Shown here one piece after another: positions 6,001-52,400 of a stretch of 64,000 nt of DNA. This DNA comes from Phyllobates terribilis (Eukaryota). The position numbers were made by a program, and so were the translations under genes. How positions within the stretch are numbered: position 1 is the stretch's first letter; each line of letters starts with the position of its first letter. Location: the NCBI RefSeq assembly GCF_046119375.1, contig NW_027362764.1, forward strand, positions 806,992,001 through 807,056,000, in the 5' to 3' direction. A model generated the notes under the pieces. That model was not told where the DNA came from. It worked only from the letters and a program-made list of their open reading frames with translations, and ran no database searches.

Positions 6001-9000
6001 ATCTGTACTCAGAGAGTTATCACTGTGTTATCTGTGGTGTTACATGGGACTGCGGGTGACATCTACTACATTATCTGTACTCAGAGAGTTATCACTGTGT
6101 TATCTGTGTGTGTTACATAGGACTGCAGGTGACATCTACTACATTATCTGTACTCAGAGAGTTATCACTGTGTTATCTGTGTGTGTTACATAGGACTGCA
6201 GGTGACATCTACTACATTATCTGTACTCAGAGAGTCATCACTGTGTTATCTGTGGTGTTACATAGGACTGCAGGTGACATCTACTACATTATCTGTACTC
6301 AGAGAGCTATCACTGTGTTATCTGTGGTGTTACATAGGACTGCGGGTGATACCTACTACATTATCTGTACTCAGAGAGATATCACTGTGTTATCTGTGGT
6401 GTTACATAGGACTGCAGGTGACACCTACTACATTATCTGTACTCAGAGAGTTATCACTGTGATATCTGTGGTGTTACATAGGACTGCAGGTGACATCTAC
6501 TACATTATCTGTACTCAGAGAGTTATCACTGTGTTATCTGTGGTGTTACATAGGACTGCAGGTGACATCTACTACATTATCTGTACTCAGAGAGATATCA
6601 CTGTGTTATCTGTGGTGTTACATGGGACTGCAGGTGACATCTACTACATTATCTGTACTCAGAGAGTTATCACTGTGTTATCTGTGGTGTTACATGGGAC
6701 TACAGGTGACATATACTACATTATCTGTACTCAGAGAGTGATCACTGTGTTATCTGTGCTGTTACATAGGACTGCAGGTGACATCTACTACATTATCTGT
6801 ACTCAGAGAGTGATCACTGTGTTATCTGTGGTGTTACATAGGACTGCAGGTGACATCTACTACATTATCTGTACTCAGAGAGTTATCACTGTGCTATCTG
6901 TGGTGTTACATAGGACTGCGGGTGACATCTACTACATTATCTGTACTCAGAGAGTTATCACTGTGTTATCTGTGGTGTTACATAGGACTGCAGGTGACAC
7001 CTACTACATTATCTGTACTCAGAGTGTCATCACTGTGTTATCTGTGGTGTTACATAGGACTGCAGGTGACATCTACTACATTATCTGTACTCAGAGAGTT
7101 ATCACTGTGCTATCTGTGGTGTTACATAGGACTGCGGGTGACATCTACTACATTATCTGTACTCAGAGAGTTATCACTGTGTTATCTGTGGTGTTACATA
7201 GGACTGCAGGTGACATCTACTACATTATCTGTATTCAGAGAGTTATCACTGTGTTATTACATAGGACTGCAGGTGACATCTACTACATTATCTGTACTCA
7301 GAGAGTTATCACTGTGTTATCTGTGGTGTTACATAGGACTGCAGGTGACATCTACTACATTATCTGTACTCAGAGAGTTATCACTGTGTTATCTGTGGTG
7401 TTACATAGGACTGCAGGTGACATCTACTACATTATCTGTACTCAGAGTTATCACTGTGTTATCTGTGGTGTTACATGGGACTGCGGGTGACATCTACTAC
7501 ATTATCTGTACTCAGAGAGTTATCACTGTGTTATCTGTGTGTGTTACATAGGACTGCAGGTGACATCTACTACATTATCTGTACTCAGAGAGATATCACT
7601 GTGTTATCTGTGGTGTTACATAGGACTGCAGGTGACATCTACTACATTATCTGTACTCAGAGAGTTATCACTGTGTTATCTGTGGTGTTACATGGGACTG
7701 CGGGTGACATCTACTACATTATCTGTACTCAGAGAGTTATCACTGTGTTATCTGTGTGTGTTACATAGGACTGCAGGTGACATCTACTACATTATCTGTA
7801 CTCAGAGAGTTATCACTGTGTTATCTGTGTGTGTTACATAGGACTGCAGGTGACATCTACTACATTATCTGTACTCAGAGAGTCATCACTGTGTTATCTG
7901 TGGTGTTACATAGGACTGCAGGTGACATCTACTACATTATCTGTACTCAGAGAGCTATCACTGTGTTATCTGTGGTGTTACATAGGACTGCGGGTGATAC
8001 CTACTACATTATCTGTACTCAGAGAGATATCACTGTGTTATCTGTGGTGTTACATAGGACTGCAGGTGACACCTACTACATTATCTGTACTCAGAGAGTT
8101 ATCACTGTGATATCTGTGGTGTTACATAGGACTGCAGGTGACATCTACTACATTATCTGTACTCAGAGAGTTATCACTGTGTTATCTGTGGTGTTACATA
8201 GGACTGCAGGTGACATCTACTACATTATCTGTACTCAGAGAGATATCACTGTGTTATCTGTGGTGTTACATGGGACTGCAGGTGACATCTACTACATTAT
8301 CTGTACTCAGAGAGTTATCACTGTGCTATCTGTGGTGTTACATAGGACTGCGGGTGACATCTACTACATTATCTGTACTCAGAGAGTTATCACTGTGTTA
8401 TCTGTGGTGTTACATAGGACTGCAGGTGACACCTACTACATTATCTGTACTCAGAGTGTCATCACTGTGTTATCTGTGGTGTTACATAGGACTGCAGGTA
8501 ACATCTACTACATTATCTGTACTCAGAGAGTGATCACTGTGTTATCTGTGGTGTTACATAGGACTGCAGGTGACATCTACTACATTATCTGTACTCAGAG
8601 AGTGATCACTGTGTTATCTGTGGTGTTACATAGGACTGCAGGTGACATCTACTACATTATCTGTACTCAGAGAGTTATCACTGTGCTATCTGTGGTGTTA
8701 CATAGGACTGCGGGTGACATCTACTACATTATCTGTACTCAGAGAGTTATCACTGTGTTATCTGTGGTGTTACATAGGACTGCAGGTGACACCTACTACA
8801 TTATCTGTACTCAGAGTGTCATCACTGTGTTATCTGTGGTGTTACATAGGACTGCAGGTGACATCTACTACATTATCTGTACTCAGAGAGTTATCACTGT
8901 GCTATCTGTGGTGTTACATAGGACTGCGGGTGACATCTACTACATTATCTGTACTCAGAGAGTTATCACTGTGTTATCTGTGGTGTTACATAGGACTGCA

Positions 9001-12000
9001 GGTGACATCTACTACATTATCTGTATTCAGAGAGTTATCACTGTGTTATTACATAGGACTGCAGGTGACATCTACTACATTATCTGTACTCAGAGAGTTA
9101 TCACTGTGTTATCTGTGGTGTTACATAGGACTGCAGGTGACATCTACTACATTATCTGTACTCAGAGAGATATCACTGTGTTATCTGTGGTGTTACATAG
9201 GACTGCAGGTGACATCTACTACATTATCTGTACTCAGAGAGTTATCACTGTGTTATCTGTGGTGTTACATAGGACTGCAGGTGACATCTACTACATTATC
9301 TGTACTCAGAGTTATCACTGTGTTATCTGTGGTGTTACATAGGACTGCAGGTGACATCTACTACATTATCTGTACTCAGAGAGTTATCACTGTGTTATCT
9401 GTGGTGTTACATAGGACTGCAGGTGACATCTACTACATTATCTGTACTCAGAGTTATCACTGTGTTATCTGTGGTGTTACATAGGACTGCAGGTGACATC
9501 TACTACATTATCTGTACTCAGAGAGTTATCACTGTGTTATCTGTGGTGTTACATAGGACTGCAGGTGACATCTACTACATTATCTGTACTCAGAGAGTTA
9601 TCACTGTGTTATCTGTGGTGTTACATAGGACTGCAGGTGACATCTACTACATTATCTGTACTCAGAGAGCTATCACTGTGTTATCTGTGGTGTTACATAG
9701 GACTGCGGGTGATACCTACTACATTATCTGTACTCAGAGAGATATCACTGTGTTATCTGTGGTGTTACATAGGACTGCAGGTGACACCTACTACATTATC
9801 TGTACTCAGAGAGTTATCACTGTGATATCTGTGGTGTTACATAGGACTGCAGGTGACACCTACTACATTATCTGTACTCAGAGTGTCATCACTGTGTTAT
9901 CTGTGGTGTTACATAGGACTGCAGGTGACATCTACTACATTATCTGTACTCAGAGAGTTATCACTGTGTTATCTGTGGTGTTACATAGGACTGCAGGTGA
10001 CATCTACTACATTATCTGTACTCAGAGTTATCACTGTGTTATCTGTGGTGTTACATAGGACTGCAGGTGACATCTACTACATTATCTGTACTCAGAGAGT
10101 TATCACTGTGTTATCTGTGGTGTTACATAGGACTGCAGGTGACATCTACTACATTATCTGTACTCAGAGTTATCACTGTGTTATCTGTGGTGTTACATAG
10201 GACTGCGGGTGATACCTACTACATTATCTGTACTCAGAGAGATATCACTGTGTTATCTGTGGTGTTACATAGGACTGCAGGTGACACCTACTACATTATC
10301 TGTACTCAGAGAGTTATCACTGTGATATCTGTGGTGTTACATAGGACTGCAGGTGACACCTACTACATTATCTGTACTCAGAGTGTCATCACTGTGTTAT
10401 CTGTGGTGTTACATAGGACTGCAGGTGACATCTACTACATTATCTGTACTCAGAGAGTCATCACTGTGTTATCTGTGGTGTTACATAGGACTGCAGGTGA
10501 CATCTACTACATTATCTGTACTCAGAGAGCTATCACTGTGTTATCTGTGGTGTTACATAGGACTGCGGGTGATACCTACTACATTATCTGTACTCAGAGA
10601 GATATCACTGTGTTATCTGTGGTGTTACATAGGACTGCAGGTGACACCTACTACATTATCTGTACTCAGAGAGTTATCACTGTGATATCTGTGGTGTTAC
10701 ATAGGACTGCAGGTGACATCTACTACATTATCTGTACTCAGAGAGTTATCACTGTGTTATCTGTGGTGTTACATAGGACTGCAGGTGACATCTACTACAT
10801 TATCTGTACTCAGAGAGATATCACTGTGTTATCTGTGGTGTTACATGGGACTGCAGGTGACATCTACTACATTATCTGTACTCAGAGAGTTATCACTGTG
10901 TTATCTGTGGTGTTACATGGGACTACAGGTGACATATACTACATTATCTGTACTCAGAGAGTGATCACTGTGTTATCTGTGCTGTTACATAGGACTGCAG
11001 GTGACATCTACTACATTATCTGTACTCAGAGAGTGATCACTGTGTTATCTGTGGTGTTACATAGGACTGCAGGTGACATCTACTACATTATCTGTACTCA
11101 GAGAGTTATCACTGTGCTATCTGTGGTGTTACATAGGACTGCGGGTGACATCTACTACATTATCTGTACTCAGAGAGTTATCACTGTGTTATCTGTGGTG
11201 TTACATAGGACTGCAGGTGACACCTACTACATTATCTGTACTCAGAGTGTCATCACTGTGTTATCTGTGGTGTTACATAGGACTGCAGGTGACATCTACT
11301 ACATTATCTGTACTCAGAGAGTTATCACTGTGCTATCTGTGGTGTTACATAGGACTGCGGGTGACATCTACTACATTATCTGTACTCAGAGAGTTATCAC
11401 TGTGTTATCTGTGGTGTTACATAGGACTGCAGGTGACATCTACTACATTATCTGTATTCAGAGAGTTATCACTGTGTTATTACATAGGACTGCAGGTGAC
11501 ATCTACTACATTATCTGTACTCAGAGAGTTATCACTGTGTTATCTGTGGTGTTACATAGGACTGCAGGTGACATCTACTACATTATCTGTACTCAGAGAG
11601 ATATCACTGTGTTATCTGTGGTGTTACATAGGACTGCAGGTGACATCTACTACATTATCTGTACTCAGAGAGTTATCACTGTGTTATCTGTGGTGTTACA
11701 TAGGACTGCAGGTGACATCTACTACATTATCTGTACTCAGAGTTATCACTGTGTTATCTGTGGTGTTACATAGGACTGCAGGTGACATCTACTACATTAT
11801 CTGTACTCAGAGAGTTATCACTGTGTTATCTGTGGTGTTACATAGGACTGCAGGTGACATCTACTACATTATCTGTACTCAGAGTTATCACTGTGTTATC
11901 TGTGGTGTTACATAGGACTGCAGGTGACATCTACTACATTATCTGTACTCAGAGAGTTATCACTGTGTTATCTGTGGTGTTACATAGGACTGCAGGTGAC

Positions 12001-13297
12001 ATCTACTACATTATCTGTACTCAGAGAGTTATCACTGTGTTATCTGTAGTGTTACATAGGACTGCAGGTGACATCTACTACATTATCTGTACTCAGAGAG
12101 TTATCACTGTGTTATCTGTGGTGTTACATAGGACTGCAGGTGTCATCTACTACATTATCTGTACTCAGAGAGTTATCACTGTGTTATCTGTGGCGTTACA
12201 TGGGACTGCAGGTGACATCTACTACATTATCTGTACTCAGAGAGTTATCACTGTGTTATCTGTAGTGTTACATAGGACTGCAGGTGACATCTACTACATT
12301 ATCTGTACTCAGAGAGTTATCACTGTGTTATCTGTGGTGTTACATAGGACTGCAGGTGTCATCTACTACATTATCTGTACTCAGAGAGTTATCACTGTGT
12401 TATCTGTGGCGTTACATAGGACTGCAGGTGACATCTACTACATTATCTGTACTCAGAGAGTTATCACTGTGTTACCTGTGGTGTTACATAGGACTGCAGG
12501 TGACATCTACTACATTATCTGTACTCAGAAAGTTATCACTGTGTTATCTGTGGTGTTACATAGGACTGCAGGTGACATCTACTACATTATGTGTACTCAG
12601 AGAGTTATCATTGTGTTATCTGTGGTGTTACATAGGACTGCAGGTGACATCTACTACATTATCTGTACTCAGAGAGTTATCACTGTGTTATCTGTGGTGT
12701 TACATAGGACTGCAGGTGACATCTACTACATTATCTGTACTCAGAGAGTTATCACTGTGTTATCTGTGGTGTTACATAGGACTGCTGGTGACATCTGCTA
12801 CATTATCTGTACTCAGAGAGTTATCACTGTGTTATCTGTGGTGTTACATAGGACTGCAGGTGACATCTACTACATTATCTGTACTCAGAGAGTTATCACT
12901 GTGTTATCTGTGGTGTTACATAGGACTGCTGGTGACATCTGCTACATTATCTGTACTCAGAGAGTTATCACTGTGTTATCTGTGGTGTTACATAGGACTG
13001 CAGGTGACATCTACTACATTATCTGTACTCAGAGAGTTATCACTGTGTTATCTGTGGTGTTACATAGGACTGCAGGTGTCATCTACTACATTATCTGTAC
13101 TCAGAGTTATCACTGTGTTATCTGTGGTGTTACATAGGACTGCAGGTGACATCTACTACATTATCTGTACTCAGAGAGTTATCACTGTGTTATCTGTGGT
13201 GTTACATAGGACTGCAGGTGACATCTACTACATTATCTGTACTCAGAGAGTTATCACTGTGTTATCTGTGGTGTTACATGGGACTGCAGGTGACATC
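1..13297 (+). repeat. 72-bp tandem satellite, about 185 copies, continues past the left window edge
   Basis: Monomer TTATCACTGTGTTATCTGTGGTGTTACATAGGACTGCAGGTGACATCTACTACATTATCTGTACTCAGAGAG. Length variants are 70 bp (GA lost), 73 bp (GTGTGT) and 63 bp. The ORF track shows the expected 24-aa periodicity. Clean match ends at GACATC 13297, with degenerate similarity to about 13308. Confidence 0.99.
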
Positions 13298-13659
13298 CAA
13301 TGCATTATAACTTGCTATCTCTCTGGTATGATACATTTTCCTGCATATAAGGGAGTTCAATCGCTTTTTCTTTTATCTCTAACATGAAGAACTGTATTAT
13401 GGTTTAAAGATTCAAGTTGCAGTACCACTTTCTACCACAGCTGGCTGCAAATCTTTCCATTAACACTTATGCAACAGCGCCCCCAGCTCTGTTCTAAAGG
13501 GAATCTGATGCTTTTCTTTGAAAACTAATAACTATGGATGGAGGCTTCACCTAATAATCACACAATCCTCCTCCTGTGTCTCAGGAGGAGCCGCAGAGTA
13601 ATCACTGATCAAATATAAATTCTATGTTCCCTCTAATTGGCCGTATCGTCTTCAGTCTT

Positions 13660-24176: not shown

Positions 24177-24399
24177 ATACATTTCAGTAAGGGTGTGCAA
24201 TATTTTTTCCCTGCGTCACTTCTCATTATTACACATAATTTATGGAAATCTATAGTGATTTCTTTGCTGCGTGGATTGGATGGGATCTTACCGACATCTG
24301 GGGAGAATTTCATGTCAATAGCACCTTTACAAATACATTTACTTAGAAAACTGGCAATGTGTTCAATACTAATTTCACCCACTGTATACACTGCATATA

Positions 24400-24560
24400 C
24401 AGCTTGTGCGAAAGTTTAGGCAAGTGTATAATAAATGCTGCAGAGAAGATTCATACACAGAAGGGTTAATAGTATATTTTTATAAATTATCAAAATTAAA
24501 AGTGATGAAAAGAGAAATGTAAATTTCATCAGTATCTGGTGACCGCCCGTCGCCTCCATC
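24400..24560 (-). mobile_element. Tc1/mariner element B: 3' end only
   Basis: TA (24398-99) is followed by the TIR-like CAGCTTGTGCGAAAGTTTAGGCAAG and about 130 bp of AT-rich UTR. On the minus strand follows GAG GCG ACG GGC GGT CAC C AGA TAC TGA, resembling the Tc1 transposase C-terminus (KAKGGHTKY*). Family assignment rests on general knowledge of Tc1 ends. Confidence 0.72.
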
Positions 24561-27002
24561 ATCAGTATCTGGTGACCGCCCGTCACCTCCATCATCAGTA
24601 TCTGGTGACCGCCCGTCACCTCCATCATCAGTATCTGGTGACCGCCCGTCACCTCCATCATCAGTATCTGGTGACCGCCCGTCGCCTCCATCATCAGTAT
24701 CTGGTGACCGCCCGTCGCCTCCATCATCAGTATCTGGTGACCGCCCGTCGCCTCCATCATCAGTATCTGGTGACCGCCCGTCGCCTCCATCATCAGTATC
24801 TGGTGACCGCCCGTCACCTCCATCATCAGTATCTGGTGACCGCCCGTCACCTCCATCATCAGTATCTGGTGACCGCCCGTCGCCTCCATCATCAGTATCT
24901 GGTGACCGCCCGTCACCTCCATCATCAGTATCTGGTGACCGCCCGTCACCTCCATCATCAGTATCTGGTGACCGCCCGTCGCCTCCATCATCAGTATCTG
25001 GTGACCGCCCGTCACCTCCATCATCAGTATCTGGTGACCGCCCGTCACCTCCATCATCAGTATCTGGTGACCGCCCATCGCCTCCATCATCAGTATCTGG
25101 TCACTGCCCGTCACCTCCATCATCAGTATCTGGTGACCACCTATCACCTCCATCTCTGGTGACTGCCCGTCTCCTCCATCATCAGTATCTGGTGACCGCC
25201 TGTCGCCACCATCATCAGTATCTGGTGACTACCTATCACCTCCATCATCAGTATCTGGTGACTGCCCGTCTCCTCCATCATCAGTATCTGGTGACCGCCT
25301 GTCGCCACCATCATCAGTATCTGGTGACCACCCATCGCCTCCATCATCAGTATCTAGTGACTAACTATCACCTCCATCATCAGTATCTGGTGACTACCTA
25401 TCACCTCCATCATCATTATCTGGTGACTGCCCGTCCCCTCCATCATCAGTATCTGGTGACTGCCCGTCCCCTCCATCATCAGTATTTAGTGACCGCCTGT
25501 CGTCTCCATCATCAGTATCTGGTGACCGCCCGTCTTCTCCATCATCAGTATCTGGTGACCGCCCGTCTCCTCCATCATCAGTATCTGGTCACCGCCCGTC
25601 TCCTCTATCATCAGAATCTGGTGACTGCCCGTCTCCTCCATCATCAGTATCTGATGACCGCCCGTCTCCTCCATCATCAGTATCTGGTGACCGCCCGTCT
25701 CCTCCATCATCAGTATCTGGTCACCGCCCGTCTCCTCCATCATCAGTAACTGGTGACCGCCTGTCGCCTCCACCATCAGTATCTGGTGACCGCCTGTCTC
25801 CTCCATCATCAGTATCTGGTGACCACCCGTCACCTCCATCATCAGTATCTGGTGACTGCCCGTCACCTCCATCATCAGTATCTGGTGACCGCCCGTCTCC
25901 TCCATCATCAGTATCTGGTGACCGCCCGTCTCCTCCATCATCAGTATCTGGTGACCGCCCGTCACCTCCATCATCAGTATCTGGTGACCGCCTGTCCCCT
26001 CCATCATCAGTATCTGGTGACCGCCCGTCTCCTCCATCATCAGTATCTGGTGACCGCCCGTCTCCTCCATCATCAGTATCTGGTGACCGCCCGTCTCCTC
26101 CATCATCAGTATCTGGTGACCGCCCGTCTCCTCCATCATCAGTATCTGGTGACCGCCCGTCTGCTCCATCATCAGTATCTGGTGACCGCCCGTCTCCTCC
26201 ATCATCAGTATCTGGTCACCGCCCGTCTCCTCCATCATCAGTATCTGGTCACCGCCCGTCTCCTCCATCATCAGTATCTGGTCACCGCCCGTCTCCTCCA
26301 TCATCAGTATCTGGTCACCGCCCGTCTCCTCCATCATCAGTATCTGGTCACCGCCCGTCTCCTCCATCATCAGTATCTGGTCACCGCCCGTCTCCTCCAT
26401 CATCAGTATCTGGTCACCGCCCGTCTCCTCCATCATCAGTATCTGGTCACCGCCCGTCTCCTCCATCATCAGTATCTGGTCACCGCCCGTCTCCTCCATC
26501 ATCAGTATCTGGTCACCGCCCGTCTCCTCCATCATCAGTATCTGGTCACCGCCCGTCTCCTCCATCATCAGTATCTGGTCACCGCCCGTCTCCTCCATCA
26601 TCAGTATCTGGTCACCGCCCGTCTCCTCCATCATCAGTATCTGGTGACCGCCCGTCTCCTCCATCATCAGTATCTGGTCACCGCCCGTCACCCCCATCAT
26701 CAGTATCTGGTCACCGCCCGTCTCCTCCATCATCAGTATCTGGTCACCGCCCGTCTCCTCCATCATCAGTATCTGGTCACCGCCCGTCTCCTCCATCATC
26801 AGTATCTGGTCACCGCCCGTCTCCTCCATCATCAGTATCTGGTCACCGCCCGTCTCCTCCATCATCAGTATCTGGTCACCGCCCGTCTCCTCCATCATCA
26901 GTATCTGGTCACCGCCCGTCTCCTCCATCATCAGTATCTGGTCACCGCCCGTCTCCTCCATCATCAGTATCTGGTCACCGCCCGTCTCCTCCATCATCAG
27001 TA
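24527..27002 (+). repeat. 33-bp minisatellite, about 75 copies
   Basis: Monomer CATCAGTATCTGGTGACCGCCCGTCTCCTCCAT, giving 11-aa periodicity (HHQYLVTARLL / MMEETGGHQIL). Confidence 0.98.
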
Positions 27003-27004
27003 TC

Positions 27005-27254
27005 CTATTTTTGCACTGTTAATTCTTCCTGCTTTACATTTTGCTGTATACTCTTCTGCTTCATAGTTTTTACTTTTTTTTTGATGCAATAAATGTAACT
27101 CCAGTTTTCTTCATGGAAAGTCTTTCTTTGCTTTCACAGATGAGGTTTTGGATTTTGCTCAATCTCTGCTCCAATAAATTGTATTTACATTTTACTTTTT
27201 AGAAATTCTGCAATTATCTCCATCTGAGCTTTTGCTGCACTAAATTCTGCTGCA
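27005..27254 (+). repeat. Left portion of an old degenerate AT-rich array, interrupted by Tc1 element C
   Basis: TTTTGCTGCACTAAATTCTGCTGC and CTCTGCTCCAATAAATT match the motifs recurring at 30316-31905. Confidence 0.65.
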
Positions 27255-27292
27255 TACAGTGGGTACGGAAAGTATTCAGACCCCTTTACATT
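27255..27292 (+). mobile_element. Orphan 38-bp duplicate of the element C terminus (TA plus TIR start)
   Basis: TACAGTGGGTACGGAAAGTATTCAGACCCCTTTACATT is identical to 28693-28730. Confidence 0.95.
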
Positions 27293-28692
27293 ACGGATCT
27301 TGTACTGATCCTGAGTTAAATCCTGTATTATACCCCAGAGCTGCACTCACTATTCTGCTGGTGCAGTCACTGTGTACATACATTACATTACTGATCCTGA
27401 GCTACATCCTGTATTATACTCCAGAGCTGCACTCACTATTCTGATGGTGCAGTCACTGTGTACATACATTACATTACTGATCCTGAGTTACATCCTGTAT
27501 TATACCCCAGAGCTGCACTCACTATTCTGATGGTGCAGTCACTGTGTACATACATTACATTACTGATCCTGCACTGATCCTGAGTTATATCCTGTATTAT
27601 AATCCAGAGCTGCACTCACTATTCTGCTGGTGGAGTCACTGTGTACATACATTACATTACTGATCCTGAGTTACATCCTGTATTATACTCCAGAGCTGCA
27701 CTCACTATTCTGATGGTGCAGTCACTGTGTACATACATTACATTACTGATCCTGCACTGATCCTGAGTTATATCCTGTATTATAATCCAGAGCTGCACTC
27801 ACTATTCTGCTGGTGCAGTCACTGTGTACATACATTACATTACTGATCCTGAGTTACATCCTGTATTATACTCCAGAGCTGCACTCACTATTCTGCTGGT
27901 GCAGTCACTGTGTACATACATTACATTACTGATCCTGAGTTACATCCTGTATTATACCCCAGAGCTGCACTCACTATTCTGCTGGTGCAGTCACTGTGTA
28001 CATACATTACATTACTGATCCTGAGTTACATCCTGTATTATACCCCAGAGCTGCACTCACTATTCTGCTGGTGCAGTCACTGTGTACATACATTACATTA
28101 CTGATCCTGAGTTACATCCTGTATTATACTCCAGAGCTGCACTCACTATTCTGCTGGAGCAGTCACTGTGTACATACATTATATTACTGATCCTGAGTTA
28201 CATCCTGTATTATACTCCAGAGCTGCACTCACTATTCTGCTGGTGGAGTCACTGTGTACATACATTACATTACTGATCCTGAGTTACATCCTGTATTATA
28301 CTCCAGAGCTGCACTCACTATTCTGCTGGAGCAGTCACTGTGTACATACATTACATTACTGATCCTGAGTTACATCCTGTATTATACTCCAGAGCTGCAC
28401 TCACTATTCTGCTGGTGGAGTCACTGTGTACATACATTACATTACTGATCCTGAGTTACATCCTGTATTATACTCCAGAGCTGCACTCACTATTCTGCTG
28501 GTGCAGTCACTGTGTACATACATTACATTACTGATCCTGAGTTACCTCCTGTATTATACTCCAGAGCTGCACTCACTATTCTGCTGGTGCAGTCACTGTG
28601 TACATACATTATATTACTGATCCTGAGTTACATCCGGTATTATACTCCAGAGCTGCACTCACTATTCTGCTGGAGCAGTCACTGTGTACATG
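27293..28692 (+). repeat. 86-bp satellite, about 16 copies
   Basis: Monomer ACTGTGTACATACATTACATTACTGATCCTGAGTTACATCCTGTATTATACTCCAGAGCTGCACTCACTATTCTGCTGGTGCAGTC. Near-identical small ORFs recur every 86 bp. Two units carry an extra 11 bp (GCACTGATCCT). Confidence 0.98.
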
Positions 28693-28694
28693 TA

Positions 28695-30313
28695 CAGTGG
28701 GTACGGAAAGTATTCAGACCCCTTTACATTTTTCACTCTTTGTTTCATTGCAGCTATTTGGTAAATTCTATAAAGTTCATTTTTTTTCTCATTAAAGTCC
28801 ACTCTGCACCCCATCTTGACTGAAAAAAAACAGAAATGTAGAAATTTTTGCAAATGTATTAAAAAAGAAAAACTGAGATATCACATGGTCATAAGTATTC
28901 AGACCCTTTGCTCAGTATTGAGTAGAAGCCCCCTTTTGAGCTTGTACAGCCGTGAGTCTTCTTGGAAATGATGCAACAGGTTTTTCACCCCTGGATTTGG
29001 GGGTCCTCTGCCATTCTTCCTTGCAGATCCTCTCCAGTTCCGTCAGGTTGGATGGTGAGCGTTGGTGGACAGCCATTTTCAGGTCTCTCCAGAGATGCTC
29101 AATTGGGTTTAGGTCAGGGCTCTGGCTGGGCCAGTCAAGAATGGTCACAGAGTTGTTCTGAAGCCACTCCTTTGTTATTTTAGCTGTGTGCTTAGGGTCA
29201 TTGTCTTGTTGGAAGGTGAACCTTCGGCCAAGTCTGAGGTCCGCAGCACTCTGGAAGAGGTTTTCATCCAGGATATCTCTGTACTTGGCCGCATTCATGT
29301 TTCCTTCAATTGCAACCAGTCGTCCTGTCCCTGCAGCTGAAAAATACCCCCATAGCATGATGCAGCCACCACCATGTCTCACTGTTGGGATTGTATTGGG
29401 CAGGTGATGAGCAGTGCCTGGTTTTCTCCACACATACCGCTTAGAATTATCACCAAAAAGTTCTCTTTGTCTCATCAGACCAGAGAATCTTATTTCTCAT
29501 AGTCTGGGAGTCCTTCATGTGTTTTTAAGCAAACTCTATGCGGGCTTTCATATGTCTTGCACTGAGGAGAGGCTTCCGTCAGTCCACTCTGCCATAAAGG
29601 CCCGACTGGTGGAGGGCTGCAGTGAGAGTTGACCTTGTAGAACTTTCTCCCATCTCCCTACTGCATCTCTGGAGCTCAGCCGCAGTGATCTTGGGGTTCT
29701 TCTTTACCTCTCTCACCAAGGCTCTTCTCCCACAATTGCCCTGTTTGGCTGGATGGCCAGGTCTAGGAAGACTTCTGGTGGTCCCAAACTTCTTCCATTT
29801 AAGGATTATGGAGGCCACTGTGCTCTGAGGAACCTTGAGTAATGCAGAGATTCTTTTGTAACCTTGGCCAGATCTGTGCCTTGCCACAATTCTGTCTCTG
29901 AGCTCCTTGGGCAGTTCCTTTGAGCTCATGATTCTCATTTGGTCTGACATGCACTGTGAGCTGTGAGGTCTTATATAGACAGGTGTGCGCCTTTCCAAGT
30001 CAAGTCCTATCAGTTTAATTAAACACAGCTGGACTCCAATGAAGGAGTAGAACCATCTCAAGGAGGATCACAAGGAAATGGACACCATGTGACTTAAATA
30101 TGGGTCTGAATACTTATGACCATGTGCTATTTCAGTTTTTCTTTTTTAATAAATTTGCAAAACTCTCTACATTTCTGTTTTTTTTTCAGTCAAGATGGGG
30201 TGCAGAGTGGACTGTAAGGAGAAAAAAATGAACTTTTTAGAATTTACCAAATGGCTGCAATGAAACAAAGAGTGAAAAATTTTAAGGGGTCTGAAGACTT
30301 TCCGTTCCCACTG
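28695..30313 (-). mobile_element. Full-length Tc1 element C (1619 bp, IR/DR-type TIRs of about 215 bp, TA target duplication)
   Basis: TA|CAGTGGGTACGGAAAGTATTCAGACCCC at 28695 and GGGGTCTGAAGACTTTCCGTTCCCACTG|TA ending at 30313. Inner direct repeats AAGTATTCAGACCC at about 28895 and GGGTCTGAATACTT at about 30102. Confidence 0.98.
28912..29938 (-). pseudogene. Tc1 DD34E transposase pseudogene (element C)
   Basis: MSSKELPKELRDRIVARHRSGQGYKRIS..WSDE..VWRKPG..HGGGCIMLWGYFS..FQQDNDPKHTA..WPSQSPDLNPIEHLW..KGASTQY*. In-frame stops near 29580 (GRVD*) and 29526 (EFA*), plus a frameshift just after WSDETK. Confidence 0.97.
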
Positions 30314-30315
30314 TA

Positions 30316-31905
30316 TATCCACAATAAATTGAATTCCACTCCAAACTTTTCATCTGTAAATTGTACTTTAAATGTTACTACAATAAACTCTGCTCCAACT
30401 GTGACAATAAATAAACTCCAGCTTTCAGTTTTGATACAAGAAAACCCTCTTTCTTTTGTTGCAGTAAATTCAGCTCCGATTGTCACTAAAATATGGAGTA
30501 TTTTGCTGTAACAAACTCTGCTCCATCTGTTGCAGCGATGAAGTAAACTTTCGGCTGAATAACAAGAAAATCTACTTTTCATTTTGCTGCAATAAATTCT
30601 GCTTCAAACTTTTTTTTACAGTGAATTGCACTCCAGAATTTTGCTGTAATAAACTCTACTCTAACTGTCATTTTAGCCATAAATAAAAGCCTCGCTTCTT
30701 CAGGGATTTGTTATAATAAGTTCCACTTTTCATTTTGCTGCAATCAATTCTGCTCTGGGCTTTTTCTGCACTGAACTCTGCTCCAACTGTTACTTCGAGA
30801 AACTCTGCTTTCATTCTCGCTCTTAGGAAATCCACTTTTCCATTTTACTGCAATAAATTCTGCCCCAAACTTTTATACAGTAAATGTTTATAATTTTGCT
30901 GCAATAAACTCTGCTCCAACTGGTAAAACAATAAGCTCTGCTTCCAATTTTACTACAAGTAAATCTGCTTTCCATCTTGCTGCAATAACTTCTTCTCTAA
31001 CTGTTGCTAAGCTAAACCGCTCAGTATTTTGCTGTGACAAAGTCTGCTCCAACTGTTACTGCAATAAACTAACAACTACTGTGAAAAACCTTCTTTTCAT
31101 TTTACTACAAACAATTCTGCTCCATCTGTTACTGCATAAACTCTGCTTTCAGTTTCACTAGAAGAAAATCTGTTCTCTATTTTGCTGCAATACATTCTGC
31201 TCCAAACCTTTCTACCGTAAATTGTGCTCCTTTAATTTGCTGCACTAAGCTCTGCTCTAACTGTTACTATAATAATCTTGGCTTTGAATATCTACAAAAT
31301 TGGCTCTTCTGCATTAAATTCTGGTCCGGCCTTTTCTACAGTAAACCGTGCTCCAAAACGTTTATGCACTAAATTCCGCTCCAACTGCAATAACTTTTGA
31401 GTTCAATTTTAATTGGGAAAAAAAACACTTTTCCATTTTGCTACAATGAATTCTCCTCCACAGTTTTCTACCCTAAAAAGTCTGTTGCACCAAACTCAAC
31501 AAAATCCGCTTTCCCGCTTTGTTGCAAAAAATTCTGCTCCATTCTGCACAGTAAACCGTGCTCCAAAATGTTTCTGCAACAAATTCTGCTCCAACTGTTA
31601 CTACGATAAACTCAGCTTTCAATTTTTTACTAGTAAAAAAAAAAAAAAAGTCTCTTTTCAATTTTGCTGCAATGAATTCTGCTCCAAACTTTTCCGTGGT
31701 AAATTGTGCCTCTAAAGTTTGCTGTAATAAAGTCTACTCCAACTGTTATTTTATTCCATTTTACTGCAATAAATTCTGATCTAAACTTTTCGGAACCGTG
31801 CTCATCATTTTGCTGTCCCAGGCTCTGCTCCAACAGTAAACTCTGCTTTTGATTTTGCTGCAATAAAGTCTGCTCCAATCTTTCCAGAGCCTTTGCTGGA
31901 GTTCT
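30316..31905 (+). repeat. Old degenerate AT-rich array of ~28-34-bp subunits, loosely grouped in ~130-140-bp units
   Basis: Recurrent TTTTGCTGCAATAAATTCTGCTCCAAACT, CTCTGCTCCAACTGTTACT and CAGTAAATTGTGCTCC in the same order and on the same strand. Confidence 0.8.
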
Positions 31906-46461: not shown

Positions 46462-49400
46462 GCAGTCCCATGTAACACCACAGATAACACAGTGATAACT
46501 CTGGGTACAGATACTGTAGTAGATGTCACCAGCAGTCCTATGTAACACCACAGATAACACAGTGATAACTCTGAGTACAGATAATGTAGTAGATGTCACC
46601 TGCAGTCCTATGTAACACCACAGATAACACAGTGATAACTCTCTGAGTACAGATAATGTAGGAGATGTCACCTGCAGTCCTATGTAACACCACAGATAAC
46701 ACAGTGATAACTCTCTGAGTACAGATAATGTAGTAGATGTCACCTGCAGTCCTATGTAACACCACAGATAACACAGTGATAACTCTCTGAGTACAGATAA
46801 TGTAGTAGATTTCACCTGCAGTCCTATGTAACACCACAGATAACACCGTGATATCTCTCTGACTACAGATAATGTAGTAGATGTCACCTGCAGTCCTATG
46901 TAACACCACAGATAACAGTGATAACTCTCTGAGTACAGATAATGTAGTAGATGTCACCTGCAGTCCTATGTAACACCACAGATAACACAGTGATAACTCT
47001 CTGAGTACAGATAATGTAGTAGATGACACCTGCAGTCCTATGTAACACCACAGATAACACAGTGATAACTCTCTGAGTACAGATAATGTAGTAGATGTCA
47101 CCTGCAGTCCTATGTAACACCACGGATAACACAGTGATAACTCTGAGCACAGATAATGTAGTAGATGTTACCTGCAGTCCTATGTAACACCACAGATAAC
47201 ACCGTGATAACTCCCTGAGTACAGATAATGTAGTAGATGTCACCTGCAGTCCTATGTAATTCCACAGATAACACAGTGATAACTCTCTGAGTACAGATAA
47301 TGTAGTAGATGTCACCTGCAGTCCTATGTAACACCACGGATAACACAGTGATAACTCTGAGCACAGATAATGTAGTAGATGTCACCTGCAGTCCTATGTA
47401 ACACCACAGATAACACAGTGATAACTCTCTGAGTACAGATAATGTAGTAGATGTCGCCTGCAGTCCTATGTAACACCACAGATAACACAGTGATAACTCT
47501 CTGAGTACAGATAATGTAGTAGATGTCGCCTGCAGTCCTATGTAACTCCACAGATAACACAGTGATAACTCTCTGAGTACAGATAATGTAGTAGATGTCG
47601 CCTGCAGTCCTATGTAACTCCACAGATAACACAGTGATAACTCTCTGAGTACAGATAATGTAGTAGATGTCACCTGTAGTCCTATGTAACACCACGGATA
47701 ACACAGTGATAACTCTGAGCACAGATAATGTAGTAGATGTTACCTGCAGTCCTATGTAACACCACAGATAACACCGTGATACCTCTCTGAGTACAGATAA
47801 TGTAGTAGATGTCACCTGCAGTCCTATGTAACACCACAGATAACACAGTGATAACTCCCTGAGTACAGATAATGTAGTAGATGTCACCTGCAGTCCTATG
47901 TAACTCCACAGATAACACAGTGATAACTCTCTGAGTACAGATAATGTAGTAGATGTCACCTGCAGTCCTATGTAACACCACAGATAGCACAGTGATAACT
48001 CTCTGAGTACAGATAATGTAGTAGATGTCACCTGCAGTCCTATGTAACTCCACAGATAACACAGTGATAACTCTCTGAGTACAGATAATGTAGTAGATGT
48101 CACCTGCAGTCCTATGTAACACCACAGATAACACAGTGATAACTCTCTGAGTACAGATAATGTAGTAGATGTCACCTGCAGTCCTATGTAACACCACAGA
48201 TAACACAGTGATATCTCTCTGAGTACAGATAATGTAGTAAATGTCACCTGCAGTCCTATGTAACACCACAGATAACACAGTGATAACTCTCTGAGCACTG
48301 ATAATGTAGTAGATGTCACCTGCAGTCCTATGTAACACTACAGATAACACCGTGATATCTCTCTGAGTACAGATAATGTAGTAAATGTCACCTGCAGTCC
48401 TATGTAACACCACAGATAACACAGTGATAACTCTCTGAGTACAGATAATGTAGTAAATGTCACCTGCAGTCCTATGTAACACCACAGATAACACAGTGAT
48501 AACTCTCTGAGTAGAGATAAAGTAGTAGAGGTCACCTGCAGTCCTATGTAACACCACGGATAACACAGTGATAACTCTGAGCACAGATAATGTAGTAGAT
48601 GTTACCTGCAGTCCCATGTAACACCACAGATAACACAGTGATAACTCTCTGAGTACAGATAATGTAGTAGATGTCACCTGCAGTCCTATGTAACACCACA
48701 GATAACACAGTGATAACTCTCTGAGTACAGATAATGTAGTAGATGTCACCTGCAGTCCTATGTAACACCACAGATAACACAGTGATAACTCTCTGAGCAC
48801 TGATAATGTAGTAGATGTCACCTGCAGTCCTATGTAACACTACAGATAACACCGTGATTTCTCTCTGAGTACAGATAATGTAGTAAATGTCACCTGCAGT
48901 CCTATGTAACACCACAGATAACACAGTGATAACTCTCTGAGTAGAGATAAAGTAGTAGAGGTCACCTGCAGTCCTATGTAACACCACGGATAACACAGTG
49001 ATAACTCTCTGAGTACAGATAATGCAGTAGATGTCACCTGCAGTCCTATGTAACACCACAGATAACACAGTGATAACTCTCTGAGTACAGATAATGTAGT
49101 AGATGTCACTTGCAGTCCTATGTAACACCACAGATAACACAGTGATAACTCTCTGAGTACAGATAATGCAGTAGATGTCACCTGCAGTCCTATGTAACAC
49201 CACAGATAACACAGTGATAACTCTCTGAGTACAGATAATGTAGTAGATGTCACCTGCAGTCCTATGTAACACCACAGATAACACACTGATAACTCTCTGA
49301 GTACAGATAATGTAGTAGATGTCACATGCAGTCCTATGTAACACCACAGATAACACACTGATAACTCTCTGAGTACAGATAATGTAGTAGATGTCACCTG

Positions 49401-52400
49401 CAGTCCTATGTAACACCACAGATAACACAGTGATAACTCTCTGGGTACAGATAATGTAGTAGATGTCACCTGCAGTCCTATGTAACACCACAGATAACAC
49501 AGTGATATCTCTCTGAGTACAGATAATGTAGTAGATGTCACCTGCAGTCCTATGTAACACCACAGATAACACACTGATAACTCTCTGAGTACAGATAATG
49601 TAGTAGATGTCACCTGCGGTCCTATGTAACACCACAGATAACACTGTGATAACTCTCTGAGTACAGATAATGTAGTAGATGTCACCTGCAGTCCTATGTA
49701 ACACCACAGATAACACACTGATAACTCTCTGAGTACAGATAATGTAGTAGATGTCACCTGCAGTCCTATGTAACACCACAGATAACACAGTGATAACTCT
49801 CTGGGTACAGATAATGTAGTAGATGTCACCTGCAGTCCTATGTAACACCACAGATAACACAGTGATAACTCTGAGCACAGATAATGTAGTAGATGTTACC
49901 TGCAGTCCTATGTAACACCACAGATAACACAATGATAACTCTCTGAGTACAGATAATGTAGTAGATGTCACCTGCAGTCCTATGTAACACCACAGATAAC
50001 ACAGTGATAACTCTCTGAGTACAGATAATGTAGTAGATGTCACCTGCAGTCCTATGTAACACCACAGATAACACAGTGATAACTCTCTGAGTACAGATAA
50101 TGTAGTAGATATCACCTGCAGTCCTATGCAACACCACAGATAACACAGTGATTGCTCTCTGAGTACAGATAATGTAGTAGATGTCACCTGCAGTCCTATG
50201 TAACACTACAGATAACACAGTGATAACTCTCTGAGTACAGATAATGTAGTAGATGTCACCTGCAGTCCTATGTAACACCACAGATAACACAGTGATAACT
50301 CTCTGAGTACAGATAATGTAGTAGATGTCACCTGCAGTCCTATGTAACACCACAGATAACACAGTGATAAATCTGAGTACAGATAATGTAGTAGATGTCA
50401 CCTGCAGTCCTATGTAACACCACAGATAACACAGTGATAACTCTCTGAGTACAGATAATGTAGTAGATGTCACCTGCAGTCCTATGTAACACCACAGATA
50501 ACACAGTGATAAATCTGAGTACAGATAATGTAGTAGATGTCACCTGCAATCCTATGTAACACCACAGATAGCACAGTGATAACTCTCTGAGTACAGATAA
50601 TGTAGTAGATGTCACCTGCAGTCCTATGTAACACCACAGATAACACAGTGATAACTCTGAGTACAGATAATGTAGTAGATGTCACCTGCAGTCCTATGAA
50701 ACACCACAGATAACACAGTGATAACTCTCTGAGTACAGATAATGTAGTAGATGTCACCTACAGTCCTATGTAACACCACAGATAACACAGTGATAACTCT
50801 GAGTACAGATAATGTAGTAGATGTCGCCTGCAGTCCTATGTAACACTACAGATAACACAGTGATAACTCTGAGTACAGATAATGTAGTAGATGTCACCTG
50901 CAGTCCTATGTAACACCACAGATAACACAGTGATAACTCTCTGAGTACAGATAATGTAGTAGATGTCACCTGCAGTCCTATGTAACACCACAGATAACAG
51001 TGATAACTCTGAGTACAGATAATGTAGTAGATGTCACCTACAGTCCTATGTAACACCACAGATAACACAGTGATAACTCTGAGTACAGATAATGTAGTAG
51101 ATGTCTCCTGCAGTCCTATGTAACACCACAGATAACACAGTGATAACTCTCTGAGTACAGATAATGTAGTAGATGTCACCTGCAGTCCTATGTAACACCA
51201 CAGATAACACAGTGATAACTCTCTGAGTACAGATAATGTAGTAGATGTCACCTGCAGTCCTATGTAACACCACAGATAACACAGTGATAAATCTGAGTAC
51301 AGATAATGTAGTAGATGTCACCTGCAGTCCTATGTAACACCACAGATAGCACAGTGATAACTCTCTGAGTACAGATAATGTAGTAGATGTCACCTGCAGT
51401 CCTATGTAACACCACAGATAACACAGTGATAACTCTGAGTACAGATAATGTAGTAGATGTCACCTGCAGTCCTATGTAACACCACAGATAACACAGTGAT
51501 AACTCTCTGAGTACAGATAATGTAGTAGATGTCACCTACAGTCCTATGTAACACCACAGATAACACAGTGATGACTCTCTGAGTACAGATAATGTAGTAG
51601 ATGTCACCTGCAGTCCTATGTAACACCACAGATAACATAGTGATAAATCTGAGTACTGATAATGTAGTAGATGTCACCTGCAGTCCTATGTAACACCACA
51701 GATAACACAGTGATAACTCTGAGTACAGATAATGTAGTAGATGTCACCTGCAGTCCTATGTAACACCACAGATAACACAGTGATAACTCTCTGAGTACAG
51801 ATAATGTAGTAGATGTCACCTACAGTCCTATGTAACACCACAGATAACACAGTGATGACTCTCTGAGTACAGATAATGTAGTAGATGTCACCTGCAGTCC
51901 TATGTAACACCACAGATAACATAGTGATAAATCTGAGTACTGATAATGTAGTAGATGTCACCTGCAGTCCTATGTAACACCACAGATAACACAGTGATAA
52001 CTCTGAGTACAGATAATGTAGTAGATGTCACCTGCAGTCCTATGTAACACCACAGATAACACAGTGATAACTCTCTGAGTACAGATAATGTAGTAGATGT
52101 CACCTACAGTCCTATGTAACACCACAGATAACACAGTGATAACTCTGAGTACAGATAATGTAGTAGATGTCACCTGCAGTCCTATGTAACACCACAGATA
52201 ACATAGTGATAACTCTGAGTACAGATAATGTAGTAGATGTCACCTGCAGTCCTATGTAACACCACAGATAACACAGTGATATCTCTCTGAGTACAGATAA
52301 TGTAGTAGATGTCACCTGCAGTCCTATGTAACACCACAGATAACACAGTGATAACTCTCTGAGTTCAGATAATGAAGTAGATGTCACCTGCAGTCCTATG

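What the first reader, a model, noticed from the sequence alone, without database searches (positions are those of the whole stretch)
27255..28730. 86-bp satellite block flanked by an exact 38-bp direct repeat of the Tc1 end: evidence for a mobile satellite
Seen: TACAGTGGGTACGGAAAGTATTCAGACCCCTTTACATT occurs at 27255-27292 and 28693-28730, with 1.4 kb of satellite between. The orphan copy matches this element's left TIR at bases where the right TIR differs (right TIR: GGGAACGG, AGTCTTC, TTAAAATT), so it duplicates this particular end rather than being an independent insertion. The left junction uses TTACATT microhomology shared by TIR and monomer; the right uses TACA. Inference: a ready-made array was copied in from elsewhere by microhomology-mediated template switching, or by circle or RNA-mediated insertion with a long target duplication. 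This would be a direct footprint of how these satellites disperse.
Basis: partly seen in the sequence, partly recalled or inferred. Interest (0 to 1): 0.75.

Follow-up and report, generated by a model that had tools for sequence, protein, structure and literature searches.

The report
Satellite block copied into Tc1 end
A 1.4-kb piece of a very abundant frog satellite repeat sits between two identical 38-base copies of one end of a dead Tc1 jumping gene, most likely copied in during repair of a DNA break; it is a clean single example of a way of spreading satellites that has already been described in flies, beetles and humans.

Summary
An exact 38-bp direct repeat (27255-27292 and 28693-28730) brackets 16 units of an 86-bp satellite. 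The inner copy is the true end of a 1,624-bp dead Tc1 of the Sleeping Beauty type (28693-30316).

The whole 3.06-kb composite lies in one degenerate 27/28-bp repeat tract between TA and TA, so it is one Tc1 insertion that later gained the satellite. The left junction is a true 7-bp microhomology (chance 6e-5). The right junction is not: one unassigned G, with TACA present twice.

The array probably arrived ready-made. It has 12 monomer types and two higher-order patterns, while the host Tc1 shows only three fixed private substitutions against its family. Its length is 16 whole units minus 3 nt, a weak hint of a circular template.

Best reading: repair synthesis with template switching at the transposon end. 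The same signature is published for Drosophila Rsp-like (7-bp microhomology plus a 32-bp duplication).

No independent read spans the satellite junctions, and genome-wide recurrence could not be tested. First readers of this scan noted satellite blocks between 11- and 14-bp direct repeats elsewhere in this genome; those notes are unchecked.

The parts
27005..27254 (.). Left host flank: a degenerate 27/28-bp repeat tract with 'ctgctcca' cores
   Evidence: An X1 contig of 323 bp with 0 differences spans 26957-27279, from the flank into the outer TIR copy (table 8).
27255..27292 (+). Orphan (outer) 38-bp copy of the Tc1 end: TA plus the complete outer transposase-binding repeat plus 8 bp
   Evidence: Exact match. 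The DR core AAGTATTCAGACCC lies at 27270.
27286..27292 (+). Left junction: the 7-bp microhomology TTACATT, shared once by the TIR and satellite positions 81-86 plus 1
   Evidence: P = 5.8e-5 over all element positions and satellite phases. Contigs of organism C in ordinary satellite context begin to fit exactly at 27286 (table 7).
27292..27302 (+). Diverged copy (9 of 11 bases) of the 11-bp extra segment that marks the 97-bp unit variant
27303..28691 (+). 86-bp satellite array: 15 full units (two are 97 bp) plus a last unit cut at consensus position 77. There are 183-bp and 172-bp higher-order pairs.
28692..28692 (+). Unassigned G at the right junction, fitting neither the satellite nor the flank
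28693..28730 (+). Inner 38-bp copy, the real terminus of the element. It starts at the TA that precedes CAGTG.
28693..30316 (-). Dead Tc1 element of the IR/DR (Sleeping Beauty-like) type, 1,624 bp including the flanking TAs, with the transposase on the minus strand. The duplicated end lies downstream of the transposase gene.
   Evidence: TIRs match at 206 of 232 aligned positions. Outer and inner DR cores lie at 28708 and 28893 on the + strand and at 30102 on the - strand.
29579..30061 (-). Transposase N-terminal fragment (HTH_SB and HTH_Tnp_Tc3_2), ending in a stop
28912..29475 (-). Transposase C-terminal fragment (DDE_3), in a separate ORF
30315..30316 (.). Right TA target duplication, partner of the TA at 27255-27256
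30317..31900 (.). Right host flank: the same degenerate 27/28-bp repeat tract
   Evidence: Only X1 has contigs here.

Best explanation
A Tc1 element inserted once, with a TA duplication, into a degenerate 27/28-bp repeat tract. Later a DNA break arose at or next to its window-left terminus, plausibly a transposase cut at that end. The flank-side 3' end copied the first 36-38 bases of a Tc1 end from the sister chromatid or from any of the thousands of identical copies. It then came off and re-annealed through the 7 bases TTACATT to the genome's abundant 86-bp satellite. It copied about 1.4 kb of already diversified array and was joined, with one or a few extra bases and no true microhomology, to the intact element end. 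This is synthesis-dependent repair with template switching, also called 'gap filling' or MMBIR-like repair. The template was either a chromosomal array or a roughly 1.41-kb satellite circle copied once round. Shown: the anatomy, the left microhomology, the abundance of the satellite and of Tc1, and the near-consensus state of the host Tc1. Inferred: the break, its cause, the order of the switches and the nature of the template.
For: The exact 38-bp repeat and the array are confirmed. The outer left end and the right end lie in the same repeat tract between TA and TA, so they belong to one insertion event. The left junction has 7 bp of shared sequence. Only 8 of about 138,000 element-position and phase combinations do as well. 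The inner copy begins within 0-2 nt of the exact transposon terminus, where transposase cuts. The array is heterogeneous: 12 haplotypes in 15 full units, 3.2% mean pairwise difference, 183- and 172-bp higher-order pairs. The host Tc1 shows only 3 substitutions (29059, 29583, 29682) that nearly all family contigs lack, out of 1,624 bp. The variation therefore predates the event. The satellite and the Tc1 family have summed contig depths of 10^4-10^6, against 5-10 for the unique flank, in three coded species. The same Tc1 family shows many internally deleted copies with short filler letters at the joints (tables 5 and 5c), the usual by-product of error-prone gap repair. The inserted stretch is 1,406 nt, which is 16 whole units minus 3 nt. 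Published precedents exist: PMC8277862 (capture by TIR elements through microhomology-guided template switching, frogs included) and PMC7403614 (satellite insertion with 7-bp microhomology and a 32-bp flanking duplication).
Against: No read or contig independent of the assembly was shown to span either satellite junction; only short Logan contigs were available. No donor array was identified. No allele without the satellite was seen. A repeat starting at the terminus could be coincidence, helped by the TACA similarity. Depth sums over contigs are only a rough guide to copy number.
Confidence: 0.55

Rival explanations
1. A double-stranded satellite circle (eccDNA) or linear fragment was ligated into a staggered break with 38-nt overhangs in the Tc1 end. 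Fill-in then produced the 38-bp duplication.
For: The length is 16 whole units minus 3 nt, as expected if a circle of whole units was opened at one point (chance about 5-8%). The eccDNA route is proposed for satellites elsewhere (PMC7719264, PMC11610590, PMC7403614).
Against: It needs two nicks 38 nt apart, one of them exactly at the transposon terminus. Ligation does not require or predict the 7-bp microhomology. The near-integer length can also arise because both junctions fall in the one TACATACATTACAT stretch of the monomer that resembles the two ends of the 38-mer.
Confidence: 0.15
2. The Tc1-end/satellite composite arose elsewhere and transposed here as one 3.06-kb unit, using the orphan outer end and the right end. 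Tc1 transposase would then carry satellite arrays around the genome.
For: TA...TA frames the whole composite. The orphan holds a complete outer binding repeat. Multicopy captured-sequence TIR elements are known (PMC8277862).
Against: IR/DR elements need both the outer and the inner repeat at each end, by established knowledge of Sleeping Beauty. The orphan lacks the inner repeat, and a complete left end lies inside. The 103-aa ORF across the right junction found no public protein covering both parts (best coverage 57%), though that database holds very few frog satellite ORFs.
Confidence: 0.1
3. RNA-mediated insertion. A nicked strand ending in TTACATT primed reverse transcription of a satellite transcript by a LINE enzyme, and a second nick 38 bp away gave a long target duplication.
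For: The 3' end TTACATT could pair with the complementary satellite RNA. First readers noted Tx1-type LINEs associated with satellites, including an 86-97-bp one, in this genome (unchecked).
Against: There is no poly(A) or other 3' tail at either end. No known ribozyme or RNA family was found, even at E = 1. No frog RNA run held the stretch. The 38-bp duplication starts at the transposon terminus, which this model does not explain.
Confidence: 0.07
4. Assembly artefact: the array and the second 38-mer were joined in wrongly.
For: The window is almost wholly satellite. The junctions were not confirmed by independent data.
Against: The repeat is direct, not inverted. The joins share 7 bp and 0 bp, far too little for assembler overlaps. 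The block is only 1.4 kb, well within single long reads. The flank-to-outer-TIR contig is exact in X1.
Confidence: 0.06
5. Two independent Tc1 insertions: the orphan is the remnant of an older element, and the satellite was already there.
For: The 38-mer shows no variant above 5% across the family, so identity alone does not prove duplication.
Against: The inner element would then have satellite on its left and the 27/28-bp tract on its right, whereas the orphan has that same tract on its left. This needs an exact replacement of an older element down to its TA, followed by a second hit in that very TA.
Confidence: 0.03

Closest known systems
Rsp-like satellite insertions into 1.688 clusters in Drosophila simulans and D. 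mauritiana (Sproul et al. 2020, PMC7403614)
   Same: In both cases a truncated satellite monomer abuts the target at a 7-bp microhomology. In some clusters the other side carries a 32-bp duplication of the target that includes the microhomology. The other junction is variable or untidy. The authors propose template switching (SDSA, FoSTeS, MMBIR) and circles.
   Different: In Drosophila the target is another satellite and the junction type recurs at many loci. Here the target is a transposon end, the duplication starts at the exact terminus, and recurrence is unknown.
Pack-TIR or 'gap-filling' capture of foreign DNA by TIR transposons (Tan et al. 2021, PMC8277862)
   Same: Foreign DNA sits between the ends of a TIR element, with microhomology at a breakpoint (1-36 bp reported). 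Frogs are included. The proposed mechanism is repair synthesis with template switching.
   Different: Pack-TIRs usually replace internal transposon sequence with unique or genic DNA. Here nothing is lost, 38 bp is duplicated, and the filler is a satellite array.
Euchromatic alpha-satellite insertions in primates (Feliciello et al. 2020, PMC7719264)
   Same: Satellite pieces are inserted in or beside transposons and are flanked by short duplications. Each insertion is unique and is not spread further by the transposon. A circle-mediated route is proposed.
   Different: The duplications there are 2-10 bp and equal the shared motif. Here the duplication is 38 bp of target, of which only 7 bp is shared.
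Satellites carried as central repeats of non-autonomous transposons (reviewed in PMC11610590)
   Same: A satellite array lies within the ends of a DNA transposon.
   Different: Those are multicopy families with the array between two inverted ends. Here there is a single known copy, with an extra direct copy of one end and a full-length element beside it.

Membership tests
Tc1/mariner, IR/DR (Sleeping Beauty-like) transposon | TA target-site duplication flanking CAGTG...CACTG termini | tested here: met
   TA at 27255-27256 and 30315-30316. The inner copy also starts with TA.
Tc1/mariner, IR/DR (Sleeping Beauty-like) transposon | Long (about 230 bp) inverted repeats, each with an outer and an inner direct repeat | tested here: met
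   206 of 232 aligned positions are identical. DR cores lie at 28708 and 28893 (+) and at 30102 (-). The right outer repeat has one change.
Tc1/mariner, IR/DR (Sleeping Beauty-like) transposon | Transposase with paired-like HTH and DDE domains | tested here: met
   HTH_SB 4.4e-26, HTH_Tnp_Tc3_2 2.8e-9, DDE_3 1.2e-15.
Tc1/mariner, IR/DR (Sleeping Beauty-like) transposon | Intact transposase reading frame (an autonomous copy) | tested here: not met
   The frame is split into ORFs of 160 and 187 aa. Family contigs differ from this copy around 29464.
Templated capture by a TIR element (Pack-TIR / gap filling) | Non-transposon DNA between the element's ends | tested here: met
   1.4 kb of satellite lies between the outer left end and the right end.
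Templated capture by a TIR element (Pack-TIR / gap filling) | Microhomology at a breakpoint beyond chance | tested here: met
   The left junction has 7 bp, P = 5.8e-5. The right junction has none.
Templated capture by a TIR element (Pack-TIR / gap filling) | Internal transposon sequence replaced by the filler | tested here: not met
   The element is full length (1,624 bp). Instead, 38 bp is duplicated.
Templated capture by a TIR element (Pack-TIR / gap filling) | Parental (donor) copy of the filler identified | not testable with these tools
   There is no genome-wide search. No other 86-mer occurs in the window.
Microhomology-mediated satellite insertion with flanking target duplication (Drosophila Rsp-like type) | A truncated monomer abuts the target at a shared motif, and the target segment including that motif is repeated on the far side | tested here: met
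   TTACATT is shared, and the 38-bp repeat includes it.
Microhomology-mediated satellite insertion with flanking target duplication (Drosophila Rsp-like type) | The same junction recurs at several loci | not testable with these tools
Circle (eccDNA)-derived satellite insertion | The insert equals a whole number of repeat units opened at one point | tested here: inconclusive
   1,406 nt is 16 units (three with the 11-bp extra) minus 3 nt. The chance is about 5-8%, and similarity of the motifs could also explain it.
Circle (eccDNA)-derived satellite insertion | The satellite is present as circles in germline cells | not testable with these tools
   No circle-sequencing data were available.
LINE-mediated (target-primed) retro-insertion | A 3' poly(A) or element-specific tail next to one target duplication | tested here: not met
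   The ends read ACGGATC... and ...TGTACATG.
Ribozyme-bearing (retrozyme-like) satellite | A self-cleaving ribozyme motif in the unit | tested here: not met
   No Rfam match at gathering score or at E up to 1.

The most novel reading that the evidence does not exclude
The block is a one-turn copy of a roughly 1.41-kb satellite circle, primed from a transposase-cut Tc1 end. That would explain why it is 16 whole units minus 3 nt and why the repeat starts at the exact terminus. The resulting composite, with a full outer binding site on its far side, could still be moved by Tc1 transposase. A hyper-abundant transposon family would then both open the breaks that take up satellite circles and carry the arrays onward.
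Probability: 0.12. Interest if true: 0.6.

Novelty: new member of a known kind. Interest (0 to 1): 0.35.

Why it matters
How satellite arrays reach new places in a genome is still argued: circles, template switching, gene conversion or transposon carriage. This locus is an unusually legible single event. Target, duplicated segment, entry phase, exit phase and host-element age can all be read to the base. The genome (by earlier unchecked notes, a poison frog) appears to hold both the satellite and the Tc1 family in very large copy numbers, so many more such events should exist. A genome-wide census of the 86-mer's array ends could separate circle-templated copying from chromosomal copying. As one locus, it adds an amphibian example to a known pattern and shows no new mechanism.

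Tried and rejected
1. Independent confirmation of the junctions failed. The only runs offered were Logan short contigs. One exact X1 contig covers the left flank into the outer TIR (26957-27279). No contig shown bridges 27292/27293 or 28691/28693, and no empty-site joint was listed.

2. Collecting other arrays of the 86-mer failed.
- Exact-pattern scans of metagenome contigs and genome contigs were blank, as expected for non-frog collections.
- A protein word search with the 103-aa ORF across the right junction found three satellite-like ORFs and some Tc1-end ORFs, but none covering both parts.

3. Searches of earlier findings by sequence were blank.

4. Birth of the satellite in place from Tc1 sequence, as in the two neighbouring Tc1s of this window, is rejected. 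Relaxed blastn finds no similarity of the 86-mer to anything else in the window. The satellite is also abundant in three species.

5. Rfam ribozyme and RNA families gave nothing.

6. The reading of two independent insertions is rejected on flank continuity.

Full report
**Observation**

The 38-mer that starts TACAGTGGGTACGG and ends TTTACATT occurs exactly twice in the window, at 27255-27292 and 28693-28730. Both copies are on the + strand, with no mismatch, and none is expected in shuffles. Between them lies an 86-bp tandem array. TRF gives 27303-28691, 15.9 copies and 93% matches. Sixteen anchor motifs are spaced 86 bp apart, or 97 bp twice. No other copy of this monomer exists in the 64-kb window, even with relaxed blastn.

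**What the parts are**

The inner 38-mer is the true terminus of a 1,624-bp Tc1 element (28693-30316).
- Its inverted repeats are about 230 bp long, identical at 206 of 232 aligned positions.
- Each end carries an outer and an inner copy of the core AAGTATTCAGACCC, which is the IR/DR architecture of Sleeping Beauty-like elements.
- The transposase lies on the minus strand and is broken into two ORFs. One has HTH_SB and HTH_Tnp_Tc3_2; the other has DDE_3.
- The duplicated end is therefore the one downstream of the transposase gene.
- The orphan 38-mer holds the TA, the whole outer binding repeat and 8 more bases, but no inner repeat.

**One insertion, later modified**

The orphan's left flank and the element's right flank both belong to the same degenerate 27/28-bp repeat tract with "ctgctcca" cores. 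The composite is framed by TA (27255-27256) and TA (30315-30316). The outer left end and the right end therefore belong to one Tc1 insertion.

The alternative of two independent insertions needs an older element replaced by satellite exactly down to its TA, then a second hit into that TA. I reject it.

**Junctions**

On the left, TTACATT (27286-27292) is shared once between TIR positions 32-38 and monomer positions 81-86 plus 1. Over every element position and every satellite phase, only 8 of about 138,000 combinations share 7 or more bases, so P = 5.8e-5. The next 11 bases (27292-27302) are a 9-of-11 match to the 11-bp extra segment that defines the 97-bp unit variant. In organism C, contigs in ordinary satellite context begin to fit the window exactly at 27286 (table 7). 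This places the start of satellite-derived sequence there.

On the right, the satellite runs to 28691, which is consensus position 77. Base 28692 is a G that fits neither partner, and TA plus CAGTG starts at 28693. TACA (or TGTACA) stands twice and is not shared once. The TGTACA-TGTACA doublet could be a short templated insertion of the kind end-joining polymerases make. That reading is inference only.

**The array came ready-made**

The 15 full monomers comprise 12 haplotypes, with a mean pairwise difference of 2.7 in 86 (3.2%). Units 3-4 and 5-6 form a 183-bp pair. Units 10-11 and 12-13 form a 172-bp pair.

The host Tc1 differs from nearly all family contigs at only three substitutions in 1,624 bp (29059, 29583, 29682), plus a few indel or structural differences. 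Mutation in place since the insertion cannot explain the diversity of the array.

Contigs laid on each variant monomer reach summed depths of 2x10^4 to 5x10^6 in all four runs, against 5-10 for the unique left flank. The satellite is thus a major repeat of three coded species (A, B, C), and its variants appear to be shared. Depth sums over contigs are only a rough measure.

Satellite-like ORFs also turned up in two ENA contigs and in a hypothetical protein of Eleutherodactylus coqui with a 27-aa (81-nt) period. The family may therefore be old.

**The "this particular end" argument fails**

At none of the 38 positions, at either copy or at the right end, does any alternative letter reach 5% of contig depth in any of the four runs (table 3). 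The left-type and right-type forms appear to be family-wide features, each present in thousands of copies. Exact identity of the two 38-mers therefore says nothing about which element was the template.

**Phase arithmetic**

Including the microhomology, the satellite-derived stretch is 1,406 nt. That equals 16 units, three of them with the 11-bp extra, minus 3 nt. Entry is at position 81 and exit at position 77.
- A circle of 16 units copied once round from a primer annealed at TTACATT, or opened at one point, would give this.
- With independent entry and exit the chance is about 5-8%.
- Both junctions also fall in the one TACATACATTACAT stretch that resembles the two ends of the 38-mer, which could produce the same result.

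I treat this as a weak hint in favour of a circular template.

**Mechanism**

I consider repair synthesis with template switching most likely (0.55).
1. A break arises at the Tc1 terminus.
2. A few dozen bases are copied from a Tc1 end.
3. Synthesis switches to the satellite through 7 bases of pairing.
4. About 1.4 kb is copied.
5. The new strand is joined untidily to the element end.

Three observations fit this model:
- The duplication begins at the exact point where transposase cuts.
- The same Tc1 family shows many internally deleted copies with filler letters at the joints (tables 5 and 5c).
- Poison-frog Tc1 families are reported as very numerous and expressed in the germline (PMC6278860: 78,037 copies of one Tc1 in Oophaga pumilio).

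The break, its cause and the order of the steps are inferred.

**Rivals**

| Rival | Confidence | Main points |
|---|---|---|
| Ligation of a circle or fragment into a staggered break | 0.15 | Fits the near-integer length; does not predict the microhomology |
| Composite formed elsewhere and transposed here | 0.10 | Fits the TA frame; the orphan lacks the inner repeat; the junction ORF found no public protein spanning both parts, a weak test |
| RNA-mediated insertion | 0.07 | No tail; no ribozyme; no frog RNA run |
| Assembly artefact | 0.06 | Direct repeat, tiny overlaps, block shorter than a long read; junctions not independently confirmed |
| Two independent insertions | 0.03 | Contradicted by flank continuity |

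**Comparison with what is known**

- Sproul et al. 2020 (PMC7403614) describe Rsp-like arrays joined to 1.688 repeats at a 7-bp microhomology. In four clusters the far side carries a 32-bp duplication that includes the microhomology. They discuss MMEJ, FoSTeS/MMBIR, SDSA with template switching, and circles.
- Feliciello et al. 2020 (PMC7719264) find 2-10-bp duplications at most euchromatic alpha-satellite insertions, many inside transposons, and propose circles.
- Tan et al. 2021 (PMC8277862) show capture by TIR elements through microhomology-guided template switching in animals, frogs included.

The present locus is a new, very readable member of this known kind. Its particular points are a transposon terminus as target, no loss of transposon sequence, and the near-integer block length.

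**Limits**

- No tool searches this genome as a whole, so the recurrence of the junctions, the donor and the empty allele remain open.
- The species is not given. Earlier notes of this scan call it a poison frog, which I did not test.
- First readers also noted, elsewhere in this genome, satellite blocks between 14-bp and 11-bp direct repeats and a Tx1-type LINE in an 86-97-bp satellite. These notes are unchecked leads. If they hold, they suggest that block insertion with flanking duplication is recurrent in this genome.

Noticed in passing
window 1-13308 and 46462-64000: The same 72-bp satellite fills both ends of the window in opposite orientation (the two TRF consensus units are reverse complements after rotation). 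It frames a 33-kb mosaic of at least six other tandem arrays with units of 57, 27, 33, 33, 86 and 28 bp. This is a large inverted arrangement of satellite.
   Followed up: no
proteins P0001-P0003: ORFs that read like this satellite occur in two ENA contigs and in a hypothetical protein of Eleutherodactylus coqui. In that protein the repeat has a 27-aa (81-nt) period instead of 86 nt. The satellite family may be shared across distantly related frogs.
   Followed up: partly
window 28693-30316, read data: Contigs of all four runs show many internally deleted derivatives of this Tc1 family with short filler letters at the joints (for example 27280 to 29906 with GCCT, and 29154 to 30234 with 14 letters). 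Most family contigs differ from this copy at 28915, 29464 and 30102, where this copy seems to carry private indels.
   Followed up: partly
window 30338-30550: The right flank has contigs only in run X1. X2, a second sample of the same coded organism, has the left flank (27043-27192, one gap) but nothing on the right at 95% likeness. This may be a structural polymorphism or a filter effect.
   Followed up: no
window 27475-27840 and 28099-28442: There are higher-order structures inside the small array. One is a 183-bp pair (a 97-bp unit plus a unit starting CACTG with TATATCC and ATAATCC), repeated twice with 2 differences. The other is a 172-bp pair alternating GGAGCAG and GTGGAG, repeated twice with 1 difference.
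   Followed up: partly
RNA runs X15-X20: The only RNA runs holding part of the stretch (about 0.11 of words) are labelled fish gut metagenome or similar. The part held is presumably Tc1. This would fit the fish-frog horizontal transfer of Tc1 proposed in PMC6278860.
   Followed up: no
window 24375-24420: Ends of two other, different Tc1 families abut back to back near 24390 (...cccactgta / tacagcttgtgcgaaag...), next to the 33-bp array at 24526-27004. Three unrelated Tc1 families lie within 8 kb.
   Followed up: no
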